Of a stretch of 64,000 nucleotides of DNA, positions 9,792-64,000 are shown one piece after another (positions within the stretch are counted from its first letter, which is position 1; the number at the start of each line of letters is the position of its first letter). Source of the DNA: Diadema antillarum (lineage: Eukaryota); NCBI RefSeq assembly GCF_040938485.1, contig NW_027271504.1, forward strand, positions 1,364,001-1,428,000, read 5' to 3'. A program made the translations under genes and the position numbers. Below the pieces are notes generated by a model that was not told the origin of the DNA, ran no database searches, and saw nothing but the letters and a program-made list of their open reading frames with translations.

Positions 9792-9965
9792 NNNNNNNNN
9801 NNNNNNNNNNNNNNNNNNNNNNNNNNNNNNNNNNNNNNNNNNNNNNNNNNNNNNNNNNNNNNNNNNNNNNNNNNNNNNNNNNNNNNNNNNNNNNNNNNNN
9901 NNNNNNNNNNNNNNNNNNNNNNNNNNNNNNNNNNNNNNNNNNNNNNNNNNNNNNNNNNNNNNNNN
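9792..9965. other. Assembly gap (N run)
   Basis: Run of N. Confidence 1.
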
Positions 9966-13309: not shown

Positions 13310-13524
13310 NNNNNNNNNNNNNNNNNNNNNNNNNNNNNNNNNNNNNNNNNNNNNNNNNNNNNNNNNNNNNNNNNNNNNNNNNNNNNNNNNNNNNNNNNNN
13401 NNNNNNNNNNNNNNNNNNNNNNNNNNNNNNNNNNNNNNNNNNNNNNNNNNNNNNNNNNNNNNNNNNNNNNNNNNNNNNNNNNNNNNNNNNNNNNNNNNNN
13501 NNNNNNNNNNNNNNNNNNNNNNNN
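13310..13524. other. Assembly gap (N run)
   Basis: Run of N. Confidence 1.
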
Positions 13525-25089: not shown

Positions 25090-25273
25090 NNNNNNNNNNN
25101 NNNNNNNNNNNNNNNNNNNNNNNNNNNNNNNNNNNNNNNNNNNNNNNNNNNNNNNNNNNNNNNNNNNNNNNNNNNNNNNNNNNNNNNNNNNNNNNNNNNN
25201 NNNNNNNNNNNNNNNNNNNNNNNNNNNNNNNNNNNNNNNNNNNNNNNNNNNNNNNNNNNNNNNNNNNNNNNNN
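25090..25273. other. Assembly gap (N run)
   Basis: Run of N. Confidence 1.
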
Positions 25274-48596: not shown

Positions 48597-48751
48597 NNNN
48601 NNNNNNNNNNNNNNNNNNNNNNNNNNNNNNNNNNNNNNNNNNNNNNNNNNNNNNNNNNNNNNNNNNNNNNNNNNNNNNNNNNNNNNNNNNNNNNNNNNNN
48701 NNNNNNNNNNNNNNNNNNNNNNNNNNNNNNNNNNNNNNNNNNNNNNNNNNN
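48597..48751. other. Assembly gap (N run)
   Basis: Run of N. Confidence 1.
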
Positions 48752-50590: not shown

Positions 50591-51722
50591 ATGGCGTTTT
50601 CTTCAACTTCATCGAGATTGTTAGCGAATATAACGAGCCGTGCTTTGACGCAAGGAAGACAATTTAGTGTACTGAATACATCAAAGAAATTTCTGTTGCG
50701 TGAACAACACGCGTCTCGTACATTCGCACGATCCATGTGGAACCTCTCAAGTAGCCGGCGAAACTCCACGGGCAATCTAGGTGATGGCACGCCAGGTCCG
50801 CAGGCGAACGGAGTCGGCACGACGACGGTCCACTGGCCGAGTAAAACGTGTTCATGTGGTTGCGGAAGCCGGGCGAGTCTTCACACAAAAGGTGTTTGCT
50901 CTTTCCAAGGCCAAATTTAATAGATACTTCTTCTTGTCAGAAAGTCTAACCATAGCCAAGTTTAAAGAGTAATAATAGGATTGCTGAGTAATTGATCGCC
51001 CAAGGATGCGGACATACAAAATGGCCATTTAATATGCCATTATGCCTGGGTTGCAGTGGTGTAAATTGAATTAAGTTGTAGACCAGGCGATGTTAGGGAC
51101 AGGGTCTAGGTTTTTGACCTTTGTTGAAAATATTATTAGAATATTGATCTTAGAATTCTACATTATTTTCAGTAATGTCTAGTGAGCCCCATGGCGTGCA
51201 GTATAACTATTGAAATTTAAATATGAAAAGTCGTCAAGGAAGATGCCAAATTATATCCAAATCTGACATCAGATGCAGATGGGAGATCTTTATTTGGTTT
51301 GATTTGTCTTGTCTTGTCTTTTTCCTTTCTTTCTTTCTTTTTTGCGAGTGGACAGTGATGTAGAGTAATCAGAATTTAGCTAGGATTAAAGGTGATGGCT
51401 AGTACCTGTAACCTGATCAGTACAGTGGGATTCAGTGGATAAGCTGGGGGATGATTGTTCCAATCCTTGTGGGATTCATTTAAGAGTACATTATATATCT
51501 ATTGTTGTGTGAAAATGATTTGCTTCAGAATGGTCTCATATTCAAGTAATGTGCAGTTCAATATTTCCAGGTTAGCATGCCTGTACAGTGATGGGGCGAT
51601 CGTTAACGGGCTGTTAACGATTGCTTTAGCCGCCATTTTTTTTTTTTTTTTTGCTCTCCTGAACATTTGACATTTTGTAGATACGAGATCTTGTCGCCCC
51701 AGCGACGATACATATGTACATG

Positions 51723-51761
<39 letters not shown>

Positions 51762-54700
51762 CCTCTTTTGTTTTCTGTGTTTTTTTAGCTGATGGTGAGC
51801 TGGTAAAATTTCTGCAAGAGGAGATTAATGTAGAGCAAGGCAGTCTGACAGATGTGCCCAAGGTTCCCGACTTTGATGTCAGCATAGATGGGGCAGACAT
51901 CACTCTTGCCAGGCAGCTCAATGGTGAAAGGTACATTGAGACATGTACAACTGTATCTTCTGAAAGAATGTGTTTTGGACAAATCTCAGTCTTTTCCTTG
52001 TTGATCTCTTCGATAGAAAATGCCTATGAGATTGGCATACTGTTACAGATAGAGAAATGACGGTTGATTTGTGATACAATTTTGTATGCAAAGACTGTTT
52101 GAGGTAACAAATGAAACAGTTGTGTATCATTGTCTTCAAATGGTCAAAACTGCAGTACAGATGTACCTATCATGTAATTTAGGAGCAAACAACTCCTTTT
52201 GTGGATGGTAATTCATTGCGAGTTTTGTTAATTATGTGTCTCTAGTCCTTTTGAAAAGTTTTGTGAATCAGTAGCACAGATAAATATACTTGATAGATAA
52301 AGCTGTATTTCATCATCCAGAAAAAAAAAAATCCTCTATCCTAGCCAACATACTTCAGCTTATACATGTACATATATTAAAAACTACACATATCTCTGTC
52401 AGCTAGGAAAACGAATCTAATAACAAATTGCAAGATTAATGTATACATCTAGCAGTAGCTTGCTAGTTGCTGCTTCCCAAAATAATTCCTTTTAATCGCT
52501 ATTAATTACCATGTGGCCCAAGAGCTGTAGGATCTAGATGTCAGCAAAATTTGGATTTTCAAATTTCTTAGTGACATTGACAAAGTCAGACCTAATGTTC
52601 TGTGAAAATGATCATGTCAAATTTCCTTTTGCATTCAGCTTAACATTGTATAAAACGATACCTTTATAATGTAATGTGAAGTCAGCTCATCAGCAGGTTA
52701 ATGAGGGTAAAGAATGTCAATTAAAGAGAGTCACTATTTTTAGTTCTTTGTGTTCCACAGTTTAAGCCCCCTTTGTGCCACGATATTCTGAGATCACAAT
52801 GCATGAGCGCTTTTGAAAAACCAAAGCTGTGTAACTATTCATCAGTGTTTTTGCCAGAAATGCAGAACAAATTTGTGGAGAAAATTGCAAAGCTTGCTGT
52901 GATGTAACGGTTATGACATAGCTTTGGCTATTAATTCCCGTGAAAAGCCAGTATTCAAAACAATTGGGCTATGCCTGGTTGTATGTTTGAGAAAAATGTG
53001 TGAAGTTGACAAGCCACTGACTGAGTTTGCATGTGAATGTGGCACTTAAAAGAGTTAGTATGTTCAGGTAGAAGGGGTACTTTGTGACTTGAGTGATGCA
53101 TGTACAGCTACATCCCCACCTCTATTGATGATGTAATGATACAGTGAAATAATTGCTTTGTTCTCCATCTTCTCACCCTCGTGCAGAGTGGTTGTGAAGT
53201 TCAACGTCAACCATTCAGTCGAGATGGAAGGAGGAGCCCTGGCGGAACAAGACCAGCAAGAAGCAGCACCAGAGGTAACAATCCATCCAGGTTTAGAGGC
53301 TGTAAGGCTGTAGTCCATCTTTGAGTCATCTGTGAGCAGTGCATGACCTCATTCTAGGGTACTAGGTGGTGTTACTGGGTAATAGTTTATTAGAGATTTT
53401 TGCCAGATAGGAACAGATGCTCATCTGAGGGGATACTCTGCAAAGTGTTTTTTTTTTTTTTTTTTGGTGATCTTTCAGTTGGAATAGCTACAGGTATTGT
53501 GTGTATTGAGTTGTCCAGGAGAATTGTGAGTCCATCGGTTGTGTTTATTTTCAGACATAATATGAGTAGGGATGAATGTCCATTAAAGTGACTCATTTGA
53601 ATAAATTTGAATTGTGCTGGCCTTTGAGAAACAGTGTCATATGAGGAACAGCAACACTTAACCTTGTTGATTGTACATTTGTTTCCCAGACTCCAGTATC
53701 TTTAAAAGGGATATGAAGATTACTACTTGCCACTGTGCAATCGTTGTGATTTCGTGAGAACAAATTCAAAACAAGTGAAAGCCACTTACTATCTTTAAAA
53801 AAAAAAAGAAATTGTACAATTCATTTTTTTTTCCTGCCCATGTCAGATGAGGTCATATCCGGATTTCTCAGTGGAGGTCAGTAAAGAAGGCACCAACACC
53901 CTGAGGATAAGCTGCGCCTTCCAACGGGACGAAGCCCTTGAAGACCAGGAGCCCGACCCTGAGGAGGACGAGGAGCTGTTCCTGATTGACGAGGTCCTCT
54001 TCACCAGGGGTGGTGCTTCCGCAGAGGCCTCCGAAGCCGCGTATCGTGTCGGGTCAGAGGTCATGAATGGGGTGAGGCAGGAGCTTCCTTTTTCTTTTCA
54101 TTCCTTCCCTTTGCTTTTCCTTGCCTAACATAGCAATATTCTTTTTGTCATTAAGGCTTCTTTTTTTCTACTCTTGCCTATAGTTATTTTCCTATCTTTC
54201 TTCCATCACTGAAGTAAATTGAACCAATTGGATAGTACACATCCTTTTGAGATACGTTTGTGATGTTTTTTTTTTCTTCATTGTGTGTTTTGAGATATGT
54301 ATTCATAATAAAATATTTTATTGAATGTTTTGTATGTAATTGAAGGGTCAGATTTCCTGAAGTACTGTGATTGTTAGAACTGTGATTCTGAATGGTTTAT
54401 ATGCAAGTTGAAAAATTCAAGTTTCTTGATCTTGTGATGATGCATTCTAGTCTGAAGTAAAACTTTTTCTTTTCAAGTGAAGGCAGGAGTGTTAGGAATG
54501 ATATTCATCAACTGTATGGATGGCCCTTGTAGAAATCATTGATAATGATTCAGCAATGTATTCAGGCTGAGGTGATTTAAAAAAGAATGGAAAGTTGTTA
54601 CAGTCAGTAAATGACTTCTCCCCTTTCCCCATGACAGTAAAGAATAAAATAAAATGAAGAATATGATTTTTGATTTCTTCAATCTTTCCTGTTTACTAGG

Positions 54701-54846
54701 ATCTGTATGACCATCTGAAGAACTACCTTGCAGACCGCGGCATTGACAACCAGTTCTCAGAGAAGCTGTCTGACCTCGCCAGTGCAGTGGAGCACCGGCA
54801 GTATATCAACTTTTTGGAGGAGCTTAATAGTTTTCTCAAACGTTGA
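50591..54846 (+). CDS. C1QBP: Complement C1q-binding protein / p32 (MAM33 family), mitochondrial, 300 aa; exons 50591-50891, 51789-51930, 53187-53274, 53847-54071, 54700-54846
   Basis: GT-AG introns with consistent phases (1, 2, 0, 0); total 903 nt. Basic Ser/Arg-rich presequence, then CSCGCG...LHT, ELVKFLQEEI, VVVKFNVNHSV, MRSYPDFSVEV, LFLIDEV, and LYDHLKNYLADRGIDNQF...EHRQYINFLEEL..F. Confidence 0.96.
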
Positions 54847-55531
54847 TAGAATCATCACATTGTTCCAAAGAGCAGATTCGGTCTTTTTTTCTTTTTTAAT
54901 TTTGTGTTAAGCCCCATCATTCATGTGTTGAGAAAAATAACAAGATGTGTCGATTGTAATAATGCTCTGTACCAACATCTTCATAAAGGAGGTTTAAAGC
55001 AAAATGTTCAACCAGGCCTGGTGAAGTGTGAGTAGACATGCTTTATTTGGTGAAACAATAGCTGAAACTATTTTCCTGGAAGCTATTGAAAGCTTGCAAC
55101 TTCCAAGGCTGAAGAAGTGCATTTGACCAGATCCATAATTACTATACAAACTGCACATTGACATGCTCACAGTGACATCCAGCTTCCAGTACACATGTGT
55201 ACCAGAGTGAGTTCCATGAACCCATTTGCTGTGTGTTCGTGATACATATCACTAGAATATTCTGTGCTCATATTCCTAATGAATATGTCGACAAAGTGGC
55301 ATTGTTGCAAAGCCAAGATTCAGTGTAATTGAGAGCCATTTCAGAATTCAAGAGATTCCATCACTCCCCCACCCCCAAAAGGAAACTGTTCCCCAAGGAG
55401 ATTTTCATTTTGAATAACTATAAGCAATGATACCAATTCTCCAGCTCCATAGAATTTTAGCGAAATTGAAGAGATTTTGAGAAAGTCATTGTGATTCAAA
55501 AGCCATCACTAGTAGTCTGCAAGAGCAAACA

Positions 55532-55732: not shown

Positions 55733-56948
55733 GAAGTCAAATTCATTGTAAAGATTTTATAAAATCAAACTTCTGGTCTCTGTTGGTGAGAAAACAAATG
55801 ACGAGTATGACAACATAAGCTGATTATAAAGACTGTTGTAGGATGCCTTGTTAGAGGAATTGGTGAAATTCAGATATTCATGATATTAGGCAACTTTTCT
55901 CTAATTATTCTCACCAAACTGTTCTTTTGCTTTTACTACCCTTGTCGGTAACAACACACTCTTCCTTTCTGTCTAGGCAAACATCTAGCTGATAAATCAC
56001 TGAACGAAAATGAACAGGACTAATAAACTTTATGATTCCTAGCATATGCTTACTTGTAAGGAGTGGGTGCAGTGTTTTCTATTGCTCAACATTCAAACAC
56101 ACTTGACCTTGAGAGTGCCAATTGTACTGGATAAGCACCCATCATGTCGAAATACGATAATAATCTGTCTGTCGGGTATGTTTCATCATTAATTGGAAAT
56201 GTACTAGCCTCTGTGTTGACTCGGTATTAAAGATTTAGTTCCGAGTCTTGGGCATCACTTTTAATAAAGTTGCAGTATTCCAGTCAAACAGTTATGTGCC
56301 ACCTTTTGTTCTCAACTGAGTGTCAGTGTACACAGTATATCCTTTAACCTTTATAAAGGTATGAACAAATCTACATATACAGTATTTATAAATGATTGTC
56401 ATTCAGTATATACACATGAACAGGATCAAAATATGATTGGTACAGAAAATCCAGTACAACTTGCGACAGCCAGTGCCTTGTGCAAACTGCAGATGACGTC
56501 ATGGTAACTTAAAATCATGCTCAGATTCTAGCCGCCTACCAACACACATTACACTAGATTGCTGCCCAATCAATTGTACAAGGCTCACAAATCACACTGG
56601 CATCACTGGGCAACCTTAGCAAATAAAATTTATCAAGTTCGACTTGTCCGCTAACAACGAGTTGATCGAAGAGGGCAGGCTTCATCCATCAAAGAATGAC
56701 ACAATGTTTGTGCGGCACCGATTTGTCTCTCCCCGTTGCTACCTGCACAACGAAAAATAAAAATTATGACGTGGGAATGTCGAATTACTAAACATACACA
56801 GTTTCATTCTTTACTTTGAAGGGTGCAGAATTGACTACTTTCTTTTTGTGACAGATTGAGAAACTTACGTGTCGGTCCAACACTCAAACAAATAGCGTCA
56901 AGTTGGCTCTTGCCATTCGAGTCACACAAGGAAATTTACAACTCTGTA

Positions 56949-57118
56949 CAGTGCACTCCCGTTATAACGAACACGGTTATAACGAAATTCCGGTTACATC
57001 GAGATAAAAATTCAGGCCGCAACATTATCCTACCTATGTTTTTATTGTTTATTTGTTCGGTTATATGGAAATTTCGAAATGTGGGTCCCGAGGACTTCGT
57101 TATAACTGGAGTCCATGG
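56949..57118. mobile_element. Third, internally deleted Tigger-like MITE copy
   Basis: TA|CAGTGCACTCCCGTTATAACGAAC on the left; degenerate right TIR cgttataactggagtccatgg|TA. Confidence 0.75.
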
Positions 57119-57120
57119 TA

Positions 57121-57339
57121 TTTCTCTTTCCAAATTGTGGCATCATTCAATTTAGAATGCATGTCTTGTCTTACGCAGATCCTAAATCCAAAAAAGTACA
57201 TTTGTGTGCTCATTCGAGCTGCACAAGGAATTTTGCAACACTGAATTTCTCTTTCCAAATGTGATACATACATCATTCAGTTTAGAATGCATGTTTTGTT
57301 TTACGCAGATCTTATATTAAAAAGTACATTTGTATGCTC
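57121..57339 (+). repeat. Diverged tandem duplication (~126 bp period)
   Basis: tttctctttccaaat...catcattca.tttagaatgcatgt.ttgt.ttacgcagatc...aaaaagtacatttgt.tgctc occurs twice. Confidence 0.8.
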
Positions 57340-57518
57340 TAGAATGCTGAAATGGAAGTAAGTTTATGAATCTTTCCATGGCCAAATCTTACGCTAGAGT
57401 TGCCAAGCAATGGCGTGAATGATGAAATGTAGGCCTTTTCATTCTGAGTGATGTTTATACAGATGTCCAAACTTTTCGTTTTGGACCTACAAAGTAACAA
57501 AAGAAAAGGGGGTTGGGC

Positions 57519-57665
57519 AAACGGACGGGAGAGTAGTTTGGCGTTTGTTGGCAATGTTTTGGGTTTTTTTCGTTTTTTTTTAATACACATTTCATAAAAC
57601 GGACGAGAGAGTGGTTTGGCGTTTGTTGGCAATTTTTTTTTTTTAATACACCTTTTTATAAAACG
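57519..57665 (+). repeat. Tandem duplication (~78 bp period)
   Basis: aaacggacg.gagagt.gtttggcgtttgttggcaat...ttaatacac occurs twice. Confidence 0.75.
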
Positions 57666-57711
57666 AACAATACATTTCATTTGTCAAAGGAGGTATTTCT
57701 GTCAGACACAC

Positions 57712-60680
57712 TCAAACAGAGAGACACAAAGTTTCACTTCTCACCAGGAATCGCCGATCGGTATATCGATCTCCCCAGGCCATCGTCATTTCCCTCGACA
57801 TCGAATGTTGGCGCTCTGGCGTTGGCACATCGCCATATTCCGAAAGTTCCGACTGACTGACGGAAAGACCCGAGTGCCTGTCCGTCATCGCAGATTTCTG
57901 GATCGTATCATGTTCGTGCGCTGTTCGACCGCCACTCGGTCTCCTCCCTGTGGTTCCAGAGCCTCTTATGGAAGCTGAAGTCAAGAACATGGATTCCGCA
58001 CGCGTCCTGTCGGTCTCGTCGTGTATGAGCATCGATGCCTCACAACGTTTATGCGTTGACGAGTCTACTTTTCCTTCTAAGCTGCGTTCGGCAATCTTCG
58101 TGGGAATTTCGGAAGTTGGCGTCTCCAGTATGCTTTTCTCGTCTTGCCAGTATGACCTCGTTGGGGGGTCAACCCGAACGGTTGGAGGACTGTATCGTTG
58201 TCTGTGCTCAATGGGACAGGTGCACCTTTTACACCTTTTGGTTTTTAACTTGGTTCGAGGGATGAATGTAGTTGGCATCGCAACTGCTGGCTAAAGAGCA
58301 GAGAGAGAGATGGGGGGGGGGGGAAGAAAGTACATGTATTGAGATCTGTAACATTAATGATGTGACGGAGGAGGATCAGCACAAAGGCTAATAAAGAAGA
58401 GGGCATGGGGTACCGTTCTCGGAGATTCACGGTTCTGTAGTTTCCTTCTAATAGCACTTGATTACTCACGAGACGCTCTGTTGATAGCCTAGCTCTTCAA
58501 CAGATTTGCTCGTGGGGATCAGTTAGAATGTAATCACAGTAGAGGAAAAATGTGACAGCGACAAATCAGAAAATCTATAGTACATTCCGAGGAAAGAAGC
58601 GGTACATGTAAAGTACATCTATATGTGCAACACACTTTGCTATTTTCAACATTTGCTGATGTTACGCAGTGCCATCAAAGTCAACTCGTGCTGATCATAG
58701 AAATTCTTTTGCTTGCACCATGAGGCTTCCCCGACATAAAAGTACACGGAGCAGTCCAATTTAGTTCACTGTGACTGCGAACTGTTCTATACCTCTGAGA
58801 GGGAAGTTACAATGCTTGTTAGCTTGTTTGAGAAACATAGTTTTGAACGTCAGCTTGCATCTAACGAACGCTCCTCACAACAACTAGCGAAGTGACTTGA
58901 GTGACGCTGCGTGCAATGGCGCCTTGGTGACACGTACGAACTCATCATGGCACGTACCTTGAGAGTGATGAGAAGGTCAAAGGGGAATCCGTTGGGGTTA
59001 CTGACACAGTCTTGGAAGAACAGCTGTGTTTGTGCCCTCTCGTGTTTGGAAACTCCGCCGTCGAGGTATGCCACAAAGATGAGGCGATCTAAATTTTGTG
59101 GAAAGACGGGAAAAATATTGACGGGTGAACTAAACGTATCAATACAAAGGAATTTAGCTTCAGAATGAATTTTTCCTCACAACACTCAAGAACAGAAAGC
59201 AATGAAACATATCATATTGGCTGTCGGGGTAATTTCACAATGACACCGCTGTAATGAAGGTATCGACCGATCGTATTAAGGTAAAGGTCATCTGCTTTGC
59301 CATTTGCGGCGACATTGAGTTCTGGATAATATAGTGATATTGCAGGCTACATTCGAATGACTAAACGTGAGAATAAAAGAAAAGACAATCACCAAAGTGG
59401 TAAGGGAGTCCTCAAAATATGAATTAAAGAATTGCCAATGAATTTTGAAGTTTTAGATCAGGGGTCGATATTGTCAAATCGTTATTTACTTTTCCTGCTA
59501 ACTGGTGAAGTCAGTTCTGACCCTTTTGCCGCCGACCGATCACGGCGGTCGGGACTTATCATATCGTAGGTGATCGTTCCGCCGGGTAGGGTGCGCCCGT
59601 ACGTCAGAGCGTGGATCTGGTCGACTACGAGCCCCGTGCGCCCGAAATCGACACACCAGCTGATGGAGCCGCTGGAATGTCTTGGCTTTCTGGTCAGGTA
59701 CGCCTGGGGCAAGGATAAAGACGTGTATATGGATCATGGCTCTGAATAAGCCTTCATAGGAATATTGTCTGAGAACGTAACACACACACATCCAGTACAA
59801 ATGCAGTATATCTCAGCGATTATTCTTTGGCACCGTATCACAAGAAGATGTTTACCATGTCATCATTGTCGTAACCTCGAGATATTATATCTAAGGGAGT
59901 CGATCTGTCTTCTTGAACACAATATGTCATACTACTAGTAATGCTCAAGGAGACCATACCACACATTCAAACACTCTCATTCCGAACATTGCTAGTGCTT
60001 GCAATTATATTTTTATCTTCAAGATTCCTTCATTAAACCTTGGGATGCCAAAGGGTAATTTCAGTCTGGTCTATCCCGTATCTTTATTTATTCGCGGGAT
60101 AGCTCCGTTCTCAGGACATAATGGTTTCAACCGCATCTACGTAATACGCCGACGATGGGCATTGATGGTGGTGCAGTGTATTGACGCAGCGAAAGTAAAC
60201 TTTTTCCGTAGTCAAATATACATCTTCATCGAAATACACATTTATTATGTATATGAGGTAAAATCAATATGCAGACACCAAAAAATCAGTGCCCTGCTGG
60301 ACAAAATTAGTAATAAACTTTGAAGTATAGCGGGGAATAACAAGCTGGCTTAGCAATATATCAAAATGAAATTTTAAACGTTTGTTGTTTGTCTGTTTTA
60401 TTTTGGTTTGGTTTTGGGTTTGTTTGTTTTTTGTTTGTTTGTGTTTGGGGGGGGGGGGGGGTGGTGGTATGCTTACCCACTCTCCTCTTTCAGGACCCTT
60501 GATGGCGTGGTAGCGCTGCATGTTCACCACTGTGAATGCACCCGCTTTCCACCCCCGAACTTCCGGGCTGGAGGAGTCTCCTCGGTAGTAGGAATCGTCC
60601 CTGGTGCTATACTGGAGACGGAAGCACCCAACCCGCGCTTCTTGCTCAGTCAGTGTAAACACGTGGTTTGGGTAATGGAC
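57712..60680 (-). CDS. PAW (PNGase C-terminal mannose-binding) domain protein with a 192-aa C-terminal extension; exons 60680-60477, 59703-59490, 59088-58958, 58290-57712; 5' end unresolved
   Basis: Four exons join through GT-AG sites with matching phases (0, 1, 0) into 375 codons plus stop. The first three align with the NGLY1 PAW domain as I recall it: VFTLTEQE...FRLQYSTRDDSYYR...VRGWKAGAF...W|AYLTRKPRHSSGSISWCVDFGRTGLVVDQI...GGTITY...LIFVAYLDGG...QTQLFFQ...FDLLITLK. Confidence 0.8.
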
Positions 60681-60875
60681 CTACAAGATGATAAAGATGA
60701 CATCAAAAGTATCGCTTCTGTAAATGTGTTTGCCGCAAAGACACTTGCTATATAAGCAATAAACAAAACACACCACCACCCCTAAAAACAAACAATCACG
60801 AAAGCAAAAATATAATAATTTATATGATACACCAGGGAGTCAATGCGTTTCGCGCGTGTTTCGCATCTATGTTAA

Positions 60876-62208
60876 CCCTATTCCCATGGGGGGGGGGGGG
60901 GCATTTTGCCCCTCCCCCCTCGACGTTTCGCGTGATTATGCCGCAACGCGTGATGCTCTCGCCGCGCATTATATGACTTTTTTCTTTCAAGTATCGCGCA
61001 ACTTTTGAGACCAAATTTGTCGCTCCCGCACTGTAAAAACATCGGTGTTAGATTTAACACCACGGGTGTTAAATCTAACACCGATAAAACTTCAATAAAG
61101 GACCACACCCACAGGTGTTAAAAATGCACTGTGATGGTGTTGAAAAGTGTTCACCTGACACTTCGTGGTGTTAATTTGATACTGTACCTGATGCTATTTT
61201 GACACTGTACTGGTGTTCATTCAAAAATGACACCACATGGTGTTGATTTGATATTTGCTGGTGTTAATATCAATGGTTTAGCACCCGTCCAGCTTCAATA
61301 AGGGACCACACCAGCTGGTGTTACTTTGGTGTAAATTTATTTTCACATTTTTTCAAAAATCTAGCATTTTAATGTAAAATTCTTGATCGTCTTGTTTAAA
61401 TTAAAAATCAACGGGAAGTGCAGTTACTAAGAAACTCTTCAAAAAACAGTTTAAAATTTGGAAATGACACCCGTAGGTGTTAATTTAACACCATAAATGA
61501 GCACCGAAAATTTAACACCAGCTCGGTGTTCACTATTTAACACCGGACTTTTTGCAGTGCGGGCATACCGTTTTGAAGCCACGCCCCTTTGATAAAAATT
61601 CGTCGACCCAAAAATTGCTCAAAAACATGATTTTGTACAAATCCAATGTAAATTGTGTTTTTGCAATTAATTCATATAGAAATGAATATTTTTACTTTCA
61701 AGGCTGACAATGATTTATTTTAGCCTGATTATGCTTTAAAAAGTTTCTGCGATAAATTTTGACGAAAAAAAAAACAAAAAGTAAAAGTAAAAAAACAAAG
61801 AAATGCATAAGAAATTCAATAAACAATGAAATGCATAAGAAATAATTATGAAGCCGAATTTTTACTTCAGTATTATTTTTGAGGATATTGAAAATATGTT
61901 CACCAAAAATTAGAAGTCTTGGAGCGTTATTTTTTGATTTACAGGCAAAAAAAAAAAAACATTTTTGCTTAAATTAGCATAAATTAATTAACATAAAATA
62001 CATACATTAAACTTTGAAAAATCTAACTACACAGTCTTGTAGATTACATTGACCTCTACCTCAGTGCAAATTTTCGCGAGGATCGCGCGACCAAGATCTG
62101 AAGGGGGGGGGGCCTTTTGGTCCCCCCCCCCCCCCCCCCCTTCAGATCTTGGTCGCGCGATCCTCGCGAAAATCCCTCAAAAAAAAAAAAAACCCGGTGG
62201 GATCAGGA
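60876..62208. mobile_element. TTAA-flanked non-autonomous DNA element (piggyBac-like ends)
   Basis: TTAA at 60872-60875 and 62209-62212; imperfect TIRs ccctattcccatgg / ccggtgggatcagga; G/C-run hairpins near both ends. Confidence 0.65.
61029..61559. mobile_element. Nested CACTG-ended non-autonomous element (CMC-EnSpm-like) with 2-bp TSD
   Basis: cactgtaaaaac ... ctttttgcagtg. CG is duplicated at 61027-61028 and 61560-61561. Many subterminal AACACC/GGTGTT motifs occur in both orientations. Confidence 0.8.
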
Positions 62209-62593
62209 TTAAGAAACTTGTTTCACTTCAGTATTGAGATCCATGCTCAAACTCCGCGCGCAGGGTAAGACAATGTTTTCACCATACATAGAGCAAATGT
62301 GCGTATTACGTGAATCCGAATAGAGTCTCTCCAATAGTGTTTAGTCTACAAATGAGACGCACATCAAAGACAAATTCATACTTGTCAACCACAGCTACTG
62401 TTCTTATTCTTGTAAATTCAGCCCATGGCTCATCTATACGTCAAGAGGCATTCATTCTCTTTGGAAGTGCGCCTGAAGATGACATATTTTGTTATCATCA
62501 TGACAACATGTAATGTGTCATTTTCATCTTTCAACGGTTCAGAGAAATGAGCATTCGTAAAGAGAGATGTATGCTCATTTTACGTCTGTTTGA

Positions 62594-62595
<2 letters not shown>

Positions 62596-62640
<45 letters not shown>
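62596..62640 (+). repeat. (GT)n microsatellite
   Basis: Direct reading of the sequence. Confidence 0.95.
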
Positions 62641-63138
62641 GTTCTCCACACACATGCTATTTTACCATGCTCTTTAGAAGTTCTAGATTCAAGAGGATGC
62701 GATTTTTCTCACTTCTTTTTTCACGTATTGCTATATACTAATACTCTGCCTACCATACACCTTCGGATTCAAGAGACTGCCTAGTCATGAATGTCACCAA
62801 AGTGCACTGATGACGAAACAAAGGGGCGCGCGCATCTTTTACTCCTCGTTGAATGTTTGCTCCAGGGTCAGTGAACTTTCATATCCCCGTAGGTCTTAGA
62901 TGAGAACGCTAATTGGTCAAAAGTTTGCGCATATCAGTGCGTTTATTTTAGCCGCCTTATCATTGGCTGAAATCACCGTAACTATAGTATTGTACTCCGA
63001 GTGTGTTTCTTACGATGTTCTGATGTGCTGTGTAAACAAATCCATTCATTCGGTATTTGCGTCAAGGCGTAGATATACGTTTTCTCTAGCTTCTAGTGAG
63101 CAGGTTGTTTTCTGCTGATTTTATTGTCGGAAAGAGAA

Positions 63139-64000
63139 ATGTCTTCTGCTGACAGCATGGCTGATACGGTAAGGTTCTGTATAATATCACAGACTAAACT
63201 TTACTATAATAACACTATCGAATTACGATGTCGTTTCAATGTCTATGCAACAAACTTCATTTGATGAACATTTCGAATTAATATTACATGGAACTTGGTT
63301 GGTAAAATGAAATGGCCAATCGTATTAGATGTATGAGTTGGATATCGAGCTACTATTTCGACGTGTTGTTTCATCTCGCTGTGAAAATGTAGAGATCAAC
63401 AGAGATAATAAAAGCGATTTGTGTTACAGAGAGGGAAAGACATAAACACAGAAAGACAAACAGCGACTACATGCGTGCAATGGGAGAAATGAAGACTGTA
63501 CGAAAGACTGTATAGTGCACTGAGAAGACAGGGAGAGAGAGAAGGGGGGGGGGGCGGGAGGGGTGGAGAATCAATGGGCACCGACCGTGGGGAGAAACAT
63601 CATGATATTGTGCATGCGACCCTGACATCCATTGATATTATCTTGCGCCCACTTTACATTTCCTTTCACAGACCAAGTCTGATTCAACCAATGTGCGGTC
63701 AGGATGCTCCGCATTTTGCTGTCTACCAATCTCCAAGCCAAAGTTCTCGCTCTCTGCGAGAAGACTTTGCCAAAGATTCCGCCGACGTTCTACCAAAGTT
63801 GTAGAATTTCTGCCACCAACAGACAACTCGTCGGAATCTCCTGGTCGACATTCGCTGCAGCCACCGCAGATGAACGACGTCGGTAGTGATCAACTGACGT
63901 CATCGACCATCTTCCTTGCAACCCCGAAATCTGCTCGCCGGCAGAGGTCCGACGACAACACAGATTTTGTTGTGGTTCAACACTCAAAATTACACGGGCA
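63139..64000 (+). CDS. Probable 5' part of an uncharacterised gene; exons 63139-63168 and 63672 to beyond the window end
   Basis: ATG...GATACG|GTAAGG (phase 0) joins a polypyrimidine acceptor tttcctttcacag|ACC (phase 0). The frame is open for 109 codons to the edge: MSSADSMADT|TKSDSTNVRSGCSAFCCLPISKPKFSLSARRLCQRFRRRSTKVVEFLPP... It is missed by the ORF track, and I do not recognise a homologue. Confidence 0.5.

What the first reader, a model, noticed from the sequence alone, without database searches (positions are those of the whole stretch)
57712..60680. Stand-alone NGLY1-type PAW glycan-binding domain spliced to a new 192-aa tail
Seen: four minus-strand exons splice in phase (0, 1, 0) and give a complete PAW domain. 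Where NGLY1 would stop after its ...IIIKF end, this gene uses AAG|GTACGT (58958) to add a 192-aa exon. No PUB or transglutaminase-like exon is recognisable between 60680 and the window end, and a plus-strand gene appears to start at 63139. Established: in animal PNGase/NGLY1 the PAW domain is the C-terminal high-mannose-binding module. As I recall, human NGLY1 has a phase-0 intron at the same W-H-M|V-Y-L-A-R position as W|AYLTR here, and the WQHTQLFRQ motif reads RAQTQLFFQ here. Inference: a duplicated NGLY1 3' end may have become an enzyme-free cytosolic lectin or adaptor, possibly with altered sugar specificity.
Basis: partly seen in the sequence, partly recalled or inferred. Interest (0 to 1): 0.8.

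Follow-up and report, generated by a model that had tools for sequence, protein, structure and literature searches.

The report
Sea-urchin PAW protein with prenylation tail

Summary
The gene model is incomplete at both ends.

**3' end.** The tail does not stop at 57712. A conserved donor (CTG|GTGAGA, last exon base 57745) splices to a final exon at 56742-56689, which ends in CVIL-stop.

**5' end.** A short 5' coding exon is needed. The candidate is 62244-62227.

**Product.** The six-exon model gives 388 aa here and 388 aa at the syntenic Diadema setosum locus.

**Family.**
- Orthologues of about 390-410 aa, with N-terminal PAW, a roughly 200-aa disordered tail and a CaaX box, occur in Strongylocentrotus, Lytechinus, Patiria, Ptychodera and Saccoglossus. 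Amphiura has a longer one (718 aa).
- They are filed only as 'uncharacterized' or 'PAW domain-containing'.
- The tail is therefore ancient, not new.

**Relation to NGLY1.**
- Canonical NGLY1 exists separately in these animals.
- Its PAW exons share all three intron positions and phases with this gene.
- The family is a 100/100 clade on a long stem.

**Selection.** dN/dS is 0.18 for the PAW part, 0.30 for the tail and 0.07 for the last 50 codons.

**Best reading.** An enzyme-free NGLY1 paralogue, tethered by prenylation to a cytosolic membrane face.

**Not tested.** Glycan binding, prenylation and transcription in this species.

The parts
62227..62244 (-). Candidate first coding exon, MDLNTE. 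Kozak context AGCATGG, donor GAA|GTGAAA, phase 0. Tentative.
   Evidence: The ATG, frame and donor are conserved at D. setosum L001:10726-10743. It resembles the S. purpuratus mini-exon ...KELADE| and the short hemichordate N-termini. There is no RNA support.
60875..62209 (.). About 1.3 kb of high-copy repeat inserted in intron 1, absent from D. setosum.
   Evidence: Alignment gap against L001. Contig depth is 10^3-10^5 against about 10 for the exons.
60477..60680 (-). PAW exon (68 codons), phase 0 at both ends.
   Evidence: Pfam PAW E 2.5e-7, model positions 24-75. 94% aa identity to the D. setosum model. The intron position before it is shared with NGLY1.
59490..59703 (-). PAW exon AYLTR...SRK. 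Donor A|GTAAAT, phase 1.
   Evidence: Pfam PAW E 1.2e-5. phmmer hit to mouse PNGase C-terminal domain 2G9F, E 1e-3. The long donor was chosen because it restores the frame, is conserved in D. setosum and matches the S. purpuratus exon length.
58958..59088 (-). Last PAW exon, ...ERAQTQLFFQ...ITLK. Donor AAG|GTACGT, phase 0.
   Evidence: 98-100% nucleotide identity to D. setosum.
57745..58290 (-). Tail exon (182 codons). Disordered and rich in Ser, Thr and Arg. Carries the basic CxxCTC motif and the AWG motif, and ends at donor CTG|GTGAGA.
   Evidence: The open frame and donor are conserved in D. setosum. dN/dS is 0.30 over the whole tail. S. purpuratus has the same last-intron position, L|V. 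The tail has pLDDT below 50 in the AF2 model of the S. purpuratus orthologue.
57712..57744 (-).
   Evidence: The peptide is not conserved in D. setosum, which reads VSSKNF.... Identity falls to 0.58 and then 0.30 here.
56689..56742 (-). Final coding exon, VATGRDKSVPHKHCVIL-stop. The CaaX box CVIL is at 56703-56692 and the stop at 56691-56689.
   Evidence: Found by scanning for C-x-x-x-stop conserved in the window and in L001. Acceptor is ...TTCGTTGTGCAG|. The last exon in S. purpuratus ends with the same CVIL. All six full-length orthologues end in CaaX.

Best explanation
The window carries the diadematid sea-urchin orthologue of a conserved ambulacrarian gene.

**Architecture.** A short N-terminus, a complete NGLY1-type PAW beta-sandwich, a roughly 200-aa disordered Ser/Thr/Arg-rich tail, and a C-terminal CaaX box (CVIL). 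The model is 388 aa from six coding exons between 62244 and 56689 on the minus strand.

**Origin.** It arose by duplication of the PAW-encoding 3' part of NGLY1 at or before the echinoderm-hemichordate ancestor. It has no PUB or transglutaminase domain, so it cannot deglycosylate.

**Proposed mechanism (inferred, not shown).**
1. The protein is made in the cytosol.
2. The CaaX cysteine is prenylated. X = L predicts geranylgeranylation; orthologues ending in CTIS or CIIM predict farnesylation.
3. The lipid, helped by neighbouring basic residues, tethers the protein to a cytosolic membrane face.
4. The PAW domain sits at the end of a long flexible linker. There it captures its ligand, most likely mannose-rich N-glycans on retrotranslocated glycoproteins or free oligosaccharides. 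It would act as a membrane-bound lectin or adaptor, not as an enzyme.

**Confidence by part.**
- Gene identity and architecture: about 0.9.
- Prenyl anchoring: about 0.7.
- Glycan as the ligand: about 0.45.
For: **PAW domain**
- Pfam hits on the window exons.
- 87.8 bits against a profile of canonical NGLY1 PAW domains only.
- Pfam PAW at 4e-16 to 5e-20 for the D. setosum, S. purpuratus and L. pictus orthologues.
- The AF2 model of the S. purpuratus orthologue has pLDDT above 90 across the domain. Its best PDB matches are mouse PNGase C-terminal domain 2G9F and 2G9G (E 8e-13, TM 0.76).

**Gene model and selection**
- The same six exons give 388 aa in the window and in syntenic D. setosum DNA, with all splice sites conserved.
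- Nei-Gojobori dN/dS is 0.18 for the PAW part, 0.30 for the tail and 0.07 for the last 50 codons.
- Exons are 85-100% identical without indels. Introns are mostly 45-90% identical and indel-rich.
- Exon depth in DNA runs indicates a single-copy gene.

**CaaX**
- CVIL is in a separate last exon in the window, D. setosum and S. purpuratus, with the same intron position.
- All six full-length orthologues end in CVIL, CVIL, CTIS, CTIL, CIIM or CHIL. None of the other 28 proteins listed, the canonical NGLY1s among them, ends in C-x-x-x.
- Tail length is held at 188-218 aa, with conserved ITLKP, CTC and AW motifs.

**Separate from NGLY1**
- Canonical NGLY1 is a different gene in Diadema antillarum and other echinoderms and hemichordates.
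- No PUB or TGase exons lie nearby.
- The family forms a 100/100 clade on a stem of 1.38 substitutions per site.
- Three intron positions and phases are shared with NGLY1.

**Orthology**
- Synteny with a MAM33-domain gene downstream holds in both Diadema and Strongylocentrotus.
Against: - No RNA run holding this locus was listed. Splicing, the 5' exon and expression in this species rest on comparative evidence only.
- The first coding exon is tentative. It is six codons long with one non-synonymous difference from D. setosum, and every difference in the in-frame stretch upstream of it is non-synonymous.
- Prenylation is predicted from sequence alone.
- Several residues invariant in NGLY1 PAW domains are replaced throughout the family: the K-x-E-x-D-W motif, the W-Q-H of WQHTQLFR, and the final R. 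Mannose binding may therefore be altered or lost. The paper defining the binding residues was not available.
- Synonymous divergence is oddly low in the PAW exons (dS 0.08 against 0.25 in the tail). This is unexplained.
- The target membrane is unknown.
Confidence: 0.6

Rival explanations
1. It is a membrane-tethered PAW protein whose PAW domain no longer binds glycans. The domain instead serves as a protein-protein or other ligand module. The architecture is the same but the biochemistry differs.
For: - Residues invariant in 31 canonical NGLY1 PAW domains (K, E, D, W before the VYLAR strand; W, Q, H and R of WQHTQLFR; W138) are systematically replaced in the family.
- The family sits on a very long stem branch.
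Against: - Many other PAW-conserved positions are kept.
- The fold is retained with high confidence.
- The replaced residues could be the contact surface with the NGLY1 catalytic core and not the sugar site. This was not tested.
Confidence: 0.3
2. It is simply the 3' end of the species' NGLY1 gene, with the PUB and transglutaminase exons lying beyond the window end.
For: - Only 3.3 kb of upstream sequence lies within the window.
- Exon 60680 needs an upstream exon.
Against: - No such exons occur in the window or in 10 kb upstream in D. setosum.
- Full-length RefSeq orthologues of 394-408 aa start just before the PAW domain.
- Canonical NGLY1 is a separate gene in Diadema antillarum. Its PAW domain is only about 32-35% identical to this one over the tblastn-aligned stretches.
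- The two groups are separate clades.
Confidence: 0.02
3. It is a decaying duplicate (pseudogene) of the NGLY1 3' end, and the tail is unconstrained sequence.
For: - Tail amino-acid identity to D. setosum (about 84%) is close to the non-coding nucleotide identity.
- No RNA evidence is available.
Against: - The 388-aa frame is intact in two species, with all splice sites conserved.
- dN/dS is 0.18, 0.30 and 0.07 for the PAW part, the tail and the last 50 codons.
- Orthologues with the same architecture occur across two phyla.
Confidence: 0.03
4. Retention of the last intron would give a protein ending ...LCLSV at 57712, and CLSV is itself a C-x-x-x end.
For: The read-through frame is open for 10 codons and ends in Cys-x-x-x in this species.
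Against: - The read-through peptide differs completely in D. setosum and has no Cys at position -4.
- Nucleotide conservation collapses after 57745.
- The donor and the CVIL exon are conserved as far as S. purpuratus.
Confidence: 0.05

Closest known systems
NGLY1 / cytosolic peptide:N-glycanase (PUB + transglutaminase core + PAW), e.g. Diadema antillarum P0092, mouse PNGase C-terminal domain PDB 2G9F/2I74
   Same: - Homologous PAW beta-sandwich.
- Three shared intron positions and phases within the PAW region.
- No N-terminal hydrophobic stretch is evident in the orthologue N-termini, so a cytosolic location is presumed. No predictor was run.
   Different: - No PUB or catalytic domain.
- The PAW domain is N-terminal, not C-terminal.
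- It adds a roughly 200-aa disordered tail and a CaaX box.
- Several NGLY1-invariant PAW residues are replaced.
- It forms a separate clade.
Database-only orthologues: S. purpuratus LOC100888005, L. pictus LOC129283041, Patiria miniata LOC119730737, Ptychodera flava XP_070572104, Saccoglossus LOC144354646, Amphiura filiformis XP_072024817
   Same: - Same architecture and exon structure, with synteny to a MAM33-domain gene.
- The window gene is their diadematid orthologue.
   Different: - 47-53% identity to the echinoid models, with the tail far more diverged than the PAW part; less to the other groups.
- They are annotated only as 'uncharacterized' or 'PAW domain-containing'.
- No paper mentions these loci, and none links PAW to prenylation.
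Stand-alone PAW proteins of nematodes (the 'other worm proteins' of the domain's name, e.g. C. elegans W09G12.8)
   Same: A PAW domain without a PNGase catalytic core (for the origin of the name; for an example).
   Different: - Not shown to be orthologous.
- None appeared among the 35 significant hits of the exhaustive search.
- No CaaX architecture is known to me for them. That last point is from my own knowledge and was not tested.
CaaX-prenylated peripheral membrane proteins (Rho/Rap GTPases, G-gamma subunits, lamins)
   Same: - C-terminal Cys-aliphatic-aliphatic-X, preceded by basic residues.
- X = L is the geranylgeranyltransferase-I signature (established knowledge).
   Different: The cargo domain is unrelated. 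Prenylation here is predicted, not shown.

Membership tests
PAW domain (Pfam PF04721) | Sequence match to the family profile above the curated threshold (31.4 bits) | tested here: met
   - Window exons alone score 31.2 and 25.8 bits.
- The near-identical D. setosum orthologue scores 59.9 bits, and S. purpuratus and L. pictus score 71.6 and 72.7 bits.
- The spliced window protein scores 87.8 bits against a profile of canonical NGLY1 PAW domains, covering model positions 15-190 of 192.
PAW domain (Pfam PF04721) | Two-layer beta-sandwich fold of the mouse PNGase C-terminal domain | tested here: met
   AF2 model of the S. purpuratus orthologue (not of the window protein itself). Residues 30-200 are mostly at pLDDT above 90. 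Top PDB hits are 2G9F and 2G9G at E 8e-13 and TM 0.76; the next hit is at E 5e-3.
PAW domain (Pfam PF04721) | Binding of mannose-rich N-glycans | not testable with these tools
   The binding residues from the 2I74 paper could not be retrieved. Several NGLY1-invariant residues are replaced. This needs a binding assay or a superposition.
NGLY1 / PNGase orthologue (EC 3.5.1.52) | Transglutaminase-like catalytic core (Cys-His-Asp) | tested here: not met
   - tblastn with four NGLY1 proteins finds only the PAW exons in the window and in 25 kb of the D. setosum locus.
- Full-length orthologues carry PAW as their only Pfam domain.
NGLY1 / PNGase orthologue (EC 3.5.1.52) | N-terminal PUB domain, with PAW at the C-terminus | tested here: not met
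   In orthologues the PAW domain starts within about 10-45 residues of the N-terminus and is followed by about 200 further residues.
NGLY1 / PNGase orthologue (EC 3.5.1.52) | Groups with NGLY1 PAW domains in a tree | tested here: not met
   The nine family members form one side of a 100/100 branch of length 1.38. All 23 NGLY1 PAW domains, from cnidarian to vertebrate, lie on the other side.
CaaX-prenylated proteins | Cys at position -4 followed by two mostly aliphatic residues and a specificity residue | tested here: met
   CVIL in the window, D. setosum, S. purpuratus and L. pictus. CTIS, CTIL, CIIM and CHIL in the other full-length orthologues.
CaaX-prenylated proteins | Cytosolic synthesis (no signal peptide or transmembrane segment) | tested here: inconclusive
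   No hydrophobic N-terminus is seen in the orthologues. This was by inspection only. The window's own first exon is tentative, and no predictor was run.
CaaX-prenylated proteins | Covalent farnesyl or geranylgeranyl on the Cys, and membrane association | not testable with these tools
   Needs metabolic labelling, and localisation of wild-type against Cys-to-Ser protein.

The most novel reading that the evidence does not exclude
Ambulacrarians (echinoderms and hemichordates) have an undescribed class of cytosolic lectin. It is a catalytically empty NGLY1 paralogue, lipid-anchored by a CaaX box to the cytosolic face of a membrane (ER, plasma membrane or nuclear envelope), with a 200-aa flexible leash. 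It would survey retrotranslocated or cytosol-exposed mannose-rich glycans, a membrane-bound counterpart of soluble NGLY1 and the Fbs-type sugar-recognising F-box proteins.
Probability: 0.35. Interest if true: 0.65.

Novelty: new variant of a known kind. Interest (0 to 1): 0.5.

Why it matters
NGLY1 is studied intensively because its loss causes a human disorder, yet its PAW domain is known almost only as an appendage of the enzyme. This is a paralogue kept for more than half a billion years in two phyla. It consists of PAW alone plus a lipid-anchor signal, which points to a job for PAW independent of deglycosylation, located at a membrane. Sea-urchin embryos are tractable enough to test that. 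On the practical side, the finding corrects the gene model. The D. setosum annotation is 'partial', and an ORF-style reading stops 33 bases into an intron, so both miss the one feature, the CaaX exon, that most constrains function.

Tried and rejected
- **RNA evidence.** No RNA run was listed for 57700-60700 or 57600-58290. The four runs laid were DNA contigs only. They showed single-copy exons, two high-copy repeats in introns, and a third related species at about 90% identity, but no junctions.
- **Exact-product look-up.** Searching for the 188-aa ORF found nothing.
- **phmmer against PDB.** The first PAW exon gave only a chance antibody hit. The second exon did find 2G9F.
- **Exon junction.** My first guess for the exon 2/3 junction (AAAAGG|GTCAGA) broke the frame. 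The short alternative donor ATAA|GTCCCG keeps phase 1 but removes about 22 residues that D. setosum and S. purpuratus retain. I rejected it in favour of A|GTAAAT.
- **5' exon search.**
  - tblastn with the S. purpuratus and L. pictus N-termini found nothing.
  - tblastx of the S. purpuratus upstream region gave only low-complexity hits.
  - A scan for ...[DE][DEK]|GT found nothing.
  - Only the scan for a conserved ATG plus donor gave a candidate.
- **D. setosum annotated start.** The 'MVT' start looks like a predictor's patch, and I did not use it.
- **Rfam.** No hit on 56000-64000.
- **Pfam on the conserved plus-strand frame** at 63711-63998: no hit.
- **Mannose-contact residues.** The 2006 structure paper is not held, and other papers give no residue list.
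- **Earlier findings of this scan.** Nothing relevant.
- **Spliced window protein.** It has no reference, so I did not send it to the database, structure or Pfam tools. I used orthologues and in-script HMMER instead.
Full report
**1. What is in the sequence**

- TCTTGTAG|GTCC at 60680 and GAGTGG|GTAAGC after 60477.
- CCCCAG|GCGTAC at 59703.
- ATTTAG|ATCGCC at 59088 and CTCAAG|GTACGT after 58958.
- CTTTAG|CCAGCA at 58290.

Translated alone, the first two exons hit Pfam PAW (PF04721) at E 2.5e-7 (model positions 24-75) and E 1.2e-5. The second also finds the mouse PNGase C-terminal domain 2G9F by phmmer. The phase-1 junction between the second and third exons is only in frame with the donor A|GTAAAT, whose last exon base is 59490.

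**2. Organism and orthologues**

A search with the 192-aa tail returned one protein: a 289-aa 'uncharacterized protein, partial' of Diadema setosum carrying PAW.

Its locus (L001, OZ188189.1) is collinear with the window at about 80-85% nucleotide identity across exons, introns and flanks. The window therefore comes from a diadematid sea urchin close to, but distinct from, D. setosum.

Further searches found these orthologues:

| Species | Identifier | Length |
|---|---|---|
| S. purpuratus | LOC100888005 | 394 aa |
| L. pictus | LOC129283041 | 397 aa |
| Patiria miniata | LOC119730737 | 408 aa |
| Amphiura filiformis | XP_072024817 | 718 aa |
| Holothuria | fragment | – |
| Ptychodera flava | XP_070572104 | 402 aa |
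| Saccoglossus kowalevskii | LOC144354646 | 396 aa |
| Glandiceps talaboti | XP_077995905 | 245 aa |

In all of them PAW is the only Pfam domain, and it sits at the N-terminus.

**3. The real 3' end**

In both Diadema sequences the tail frame runs into ...RRFL followed by CTG|GTGAG[A/T]. That is a good donor.

In D. setosum the read-through peptide is unrelated, and identity drops from 0.9 to 0.3 just beyond 57745.

Scanning downstream for a conserved C-x-x-x-stop found one exon present in both species. In the window it lies at 56742-56689, behind TTCGTTGTGCAG|, and encodes VATGRDKSVPHKHCVIL-stop.

The S. purpuratus gene has the same last intron (..NL|VESRRKSRCVIL-stop).

**4. The 5' end**

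The frame closes with a TAG immediately upstream of 60680, so an upstream ATG exon is required.
- Searches with echinoid N-termini failed.
- A scan for an ATG plus a phase-0 GT donor conserved in both Diadema sequences gave MDLNTE|GTGAAA at 62244-62227. It has a strong Kozak context.
- It resembles the S. purpuratus mini-exon ...LPKELADE| and the short hemichordate N-termini.
- I treat it as tentative.
- Intron 1 in the window holds a 1.3-kb high-copy repeat that D. setosum lacks.

**5. Coding status**

The six exons give 388 aa in the window and 388 aa in D. setosum, with every splice site conserved.

Nei-Gojobori estimates:

| Region | dN/dS | dS |
|---|---|---|
| PAW part | 0.18 | 0.084 |
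| Tail | 0.30 | 0.247 |
| Last 50 codons | 0.07 | – |

Exons align without indels at 85-100% identity, whereas introns are gappy and mostly 45-90% identical. DNA contigs from independent runs cover the exons at single-copy depth. No RNA run was listed, so transcription in this species is not shown.

**6. Relation to NGLY1**

Canonical NGLY1 (PUB, transglutaminase core, Rad4, PAW) is a separate gene in:
- Diadema antillarum, S. purpuratus and L. variegatus;
- Patiria, Amphiura and Holothuria;
- crinoids;
- the hemichordates Glandiceps and Ptychodera.

tblastn with four NGLY1 proteins finds nothing but the PAW exons in the window and the D. setosum locus. Those exons are about 32-35% identical to Diadema's own NGLY1 over the aligned stretches.

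In the D. antillarum NGLY1 gene (L003) the PAW region is interrupted at three places:
- a phase-0 intron before VGFVF;
- a phase-0 intron at WQM|VYLAR;
- a phase-1 intron at ..S|QFHE.

These are the same three positions and phases as in the window gene. That supports origin by duplication of genomic DNA and not by retroposition.

A maximum-likelihood tree of 36 PAW domains puts the nine family members on one side of a 100/100 branch of length 1.38. All NGLY1 PAW domains lie on the other side. Within the family the hemichordates and the echinoids each form a clade. The tree is unrooted, so the timing relative to other phyla is not fixed.

**7. Fold and tail**

The AF2 model of the S. purpuratus orthologue was built with a 41-row alignment.
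- PAW region: confident, mostly pLDDT above 90.
- Residues about 220-387: pLDDT below 50, read here as disordered.
- Best PDB matches: 2G9F and 2G9G, at E 8e-13 and TM 0.76.

Tail features:
- Length is held at 188-218 aa.
- The window tail is 34% Ser, Thr and Arg.
- It shares ITLKP, one or two CTC motifs next to basic residues, and an AW[GET][DE] motif 25-35 residues from the end.
- It ends in the CaaX box.
- All six full-length orthologues end in CVIL, CVIL, CTIS, CTIL, CIIM or CHIL.
- None of the other 28 proteins listed, the canonical NGLY1s among them, ends in C-x-x-x.

**8. What it most likely does**

Shown:
- It is a PAW fold without a catalytic domain.
- It carries a conserved CaaX box at the end of a long unstructured tail.
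- It is under purifying selection.

Inferred from established CaaX biology:
- Cytosolic prenylation, geranylgeranyl where X = L and farnesyl where X = S or M.
- Membrane tethering as a result.

Inferred from NGLY1's PAW domain, which binds the mannose part of N-glycans (citing Zhou et al. 2006):
- Recognition of mannose-rich glycans at that membrane.

The caveat is that a set of residues invariant in NGLY1 PAW domains is replaced throughout the family. These are K, E, D and W ahead of the VYLAR strand, and W-Q-H and R of WQHTQLFR. I could not establish whether they form the sugar site or the contact with the catalytic core. The basic clusters could equally be membrane-binding patches or nuclear-localisation signals, so the target membrane is open.

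**9. Novelty**

The orthologues already sit in RefSeq and UniProt as uncharacterized proteins. No paper in the library names them, and none couples PAW with prenylation.

Stand-alone PAW proteins are known from nematodes; the domain's name records this. The new elements are:
- the conserved PAW-linker-CaaX architecture in deuterostomes;
- its derivation from NGLY1;
- the corrected gene model.

I class it as a new variant of a known kind, of moderate interest.

**10. Limits**

- The spliced window protein has no reference, so I analysed it only in scripts. Orthologues stood in for it in the Pfam, structure and database tools.
- I did not touch the N runs at 9792-9965, 13310-13524, 25090-25273 and 48597-48751.

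Noticed in passing
ATG..ACG|GTAAGG (MSSADSMADT) is conserved with its donor in D. setosum (MSSTDIMADT). The block 63717-64000 is 93-100% identical between the species, with no indels over 63987-63717, and is open in one plus-strand frame for 96 codons. It has no Pfam hit and no gene is called there in the D. setosum record. It also contains a TGACGTCA (CRE-like) site. It would be a head-to-head neighbour and would bound the PAW gene's promoter to about 62250-63100.
   Followed up: partly
window 60802-62138 and 56791-57172: Two very high-copy repeats sit inside introns of the gene, at contig depth 10^3-10^5 against about 10 for the exons. The first is an insertion absent from D. setosum, with poly-C/G and poly-T runs. 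Internal 534-bp deletions are common among its copies.
   Followed up: partly
window ~50600-54900 (+); L001:18434-24378; L002:18718-20716: A MAM33-domain gene (C1QBP/p32-like) lies tail-to-tail downstream of the PAW gene in D. setosum and S. purpuratus. The window aligns to that part of L001, so the synteny is conserved. In S. purpuratus the upstream neighbour is GCN1. No GCN1 exon was seen within 10 kb upstream in D. setosum.
   Followed up: partly
window PAW exons 60680-58958 vs L001: Synonymous divergence in the PAW exons (dS 0.084) is about a third of that in the tail exon (0.247), and lower than the intron divergence suggests. It could be chance (10.5 synonymous differences) or extra constraint on these exons.
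   Followed up: no
P0028 (Nematostella LOC116620833), P0014/P0038 (Saccoglossus LOC100367056), P0018 (Ptychodera): Further non-NGLY1 PAW proteins exist in a cnidarian and in hemichordates, with PAW near the N-terminus or internal, 649-914 aa long and without CaaX. They fall on the NGLY1 side of the tree on long branches. PAW has apparently been reused more than once outside nematodes.
   Followed up: no
L001:10001-15377 (D. setosum annotation, P0001): The public D. setosum model is flawed. It has an artificial 'MVT' start. Its exon 3/4 junction inserts LPSFEH in place of the conserved RDHSAAKGSELTSPISRKN segment. It is truncated before the last 99 residues, so the CaaX exon is missing. The Holothuria model P0010 likewise ends ...SCDHLHKRR, which may be a mis-called 3' end.
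   Followed up: partly
window 58165-58242 (tail exon), runs X1 and X4: A second haplotype in the likely source sample, and a related species ('organism B', about 90% identical), differ from the window at a cluster of eight positions in the N-terminal part of the tail exon. The one listed difference in the CaaX exon (56719) is synonymous (TCG to TCA).
   Followed up: no
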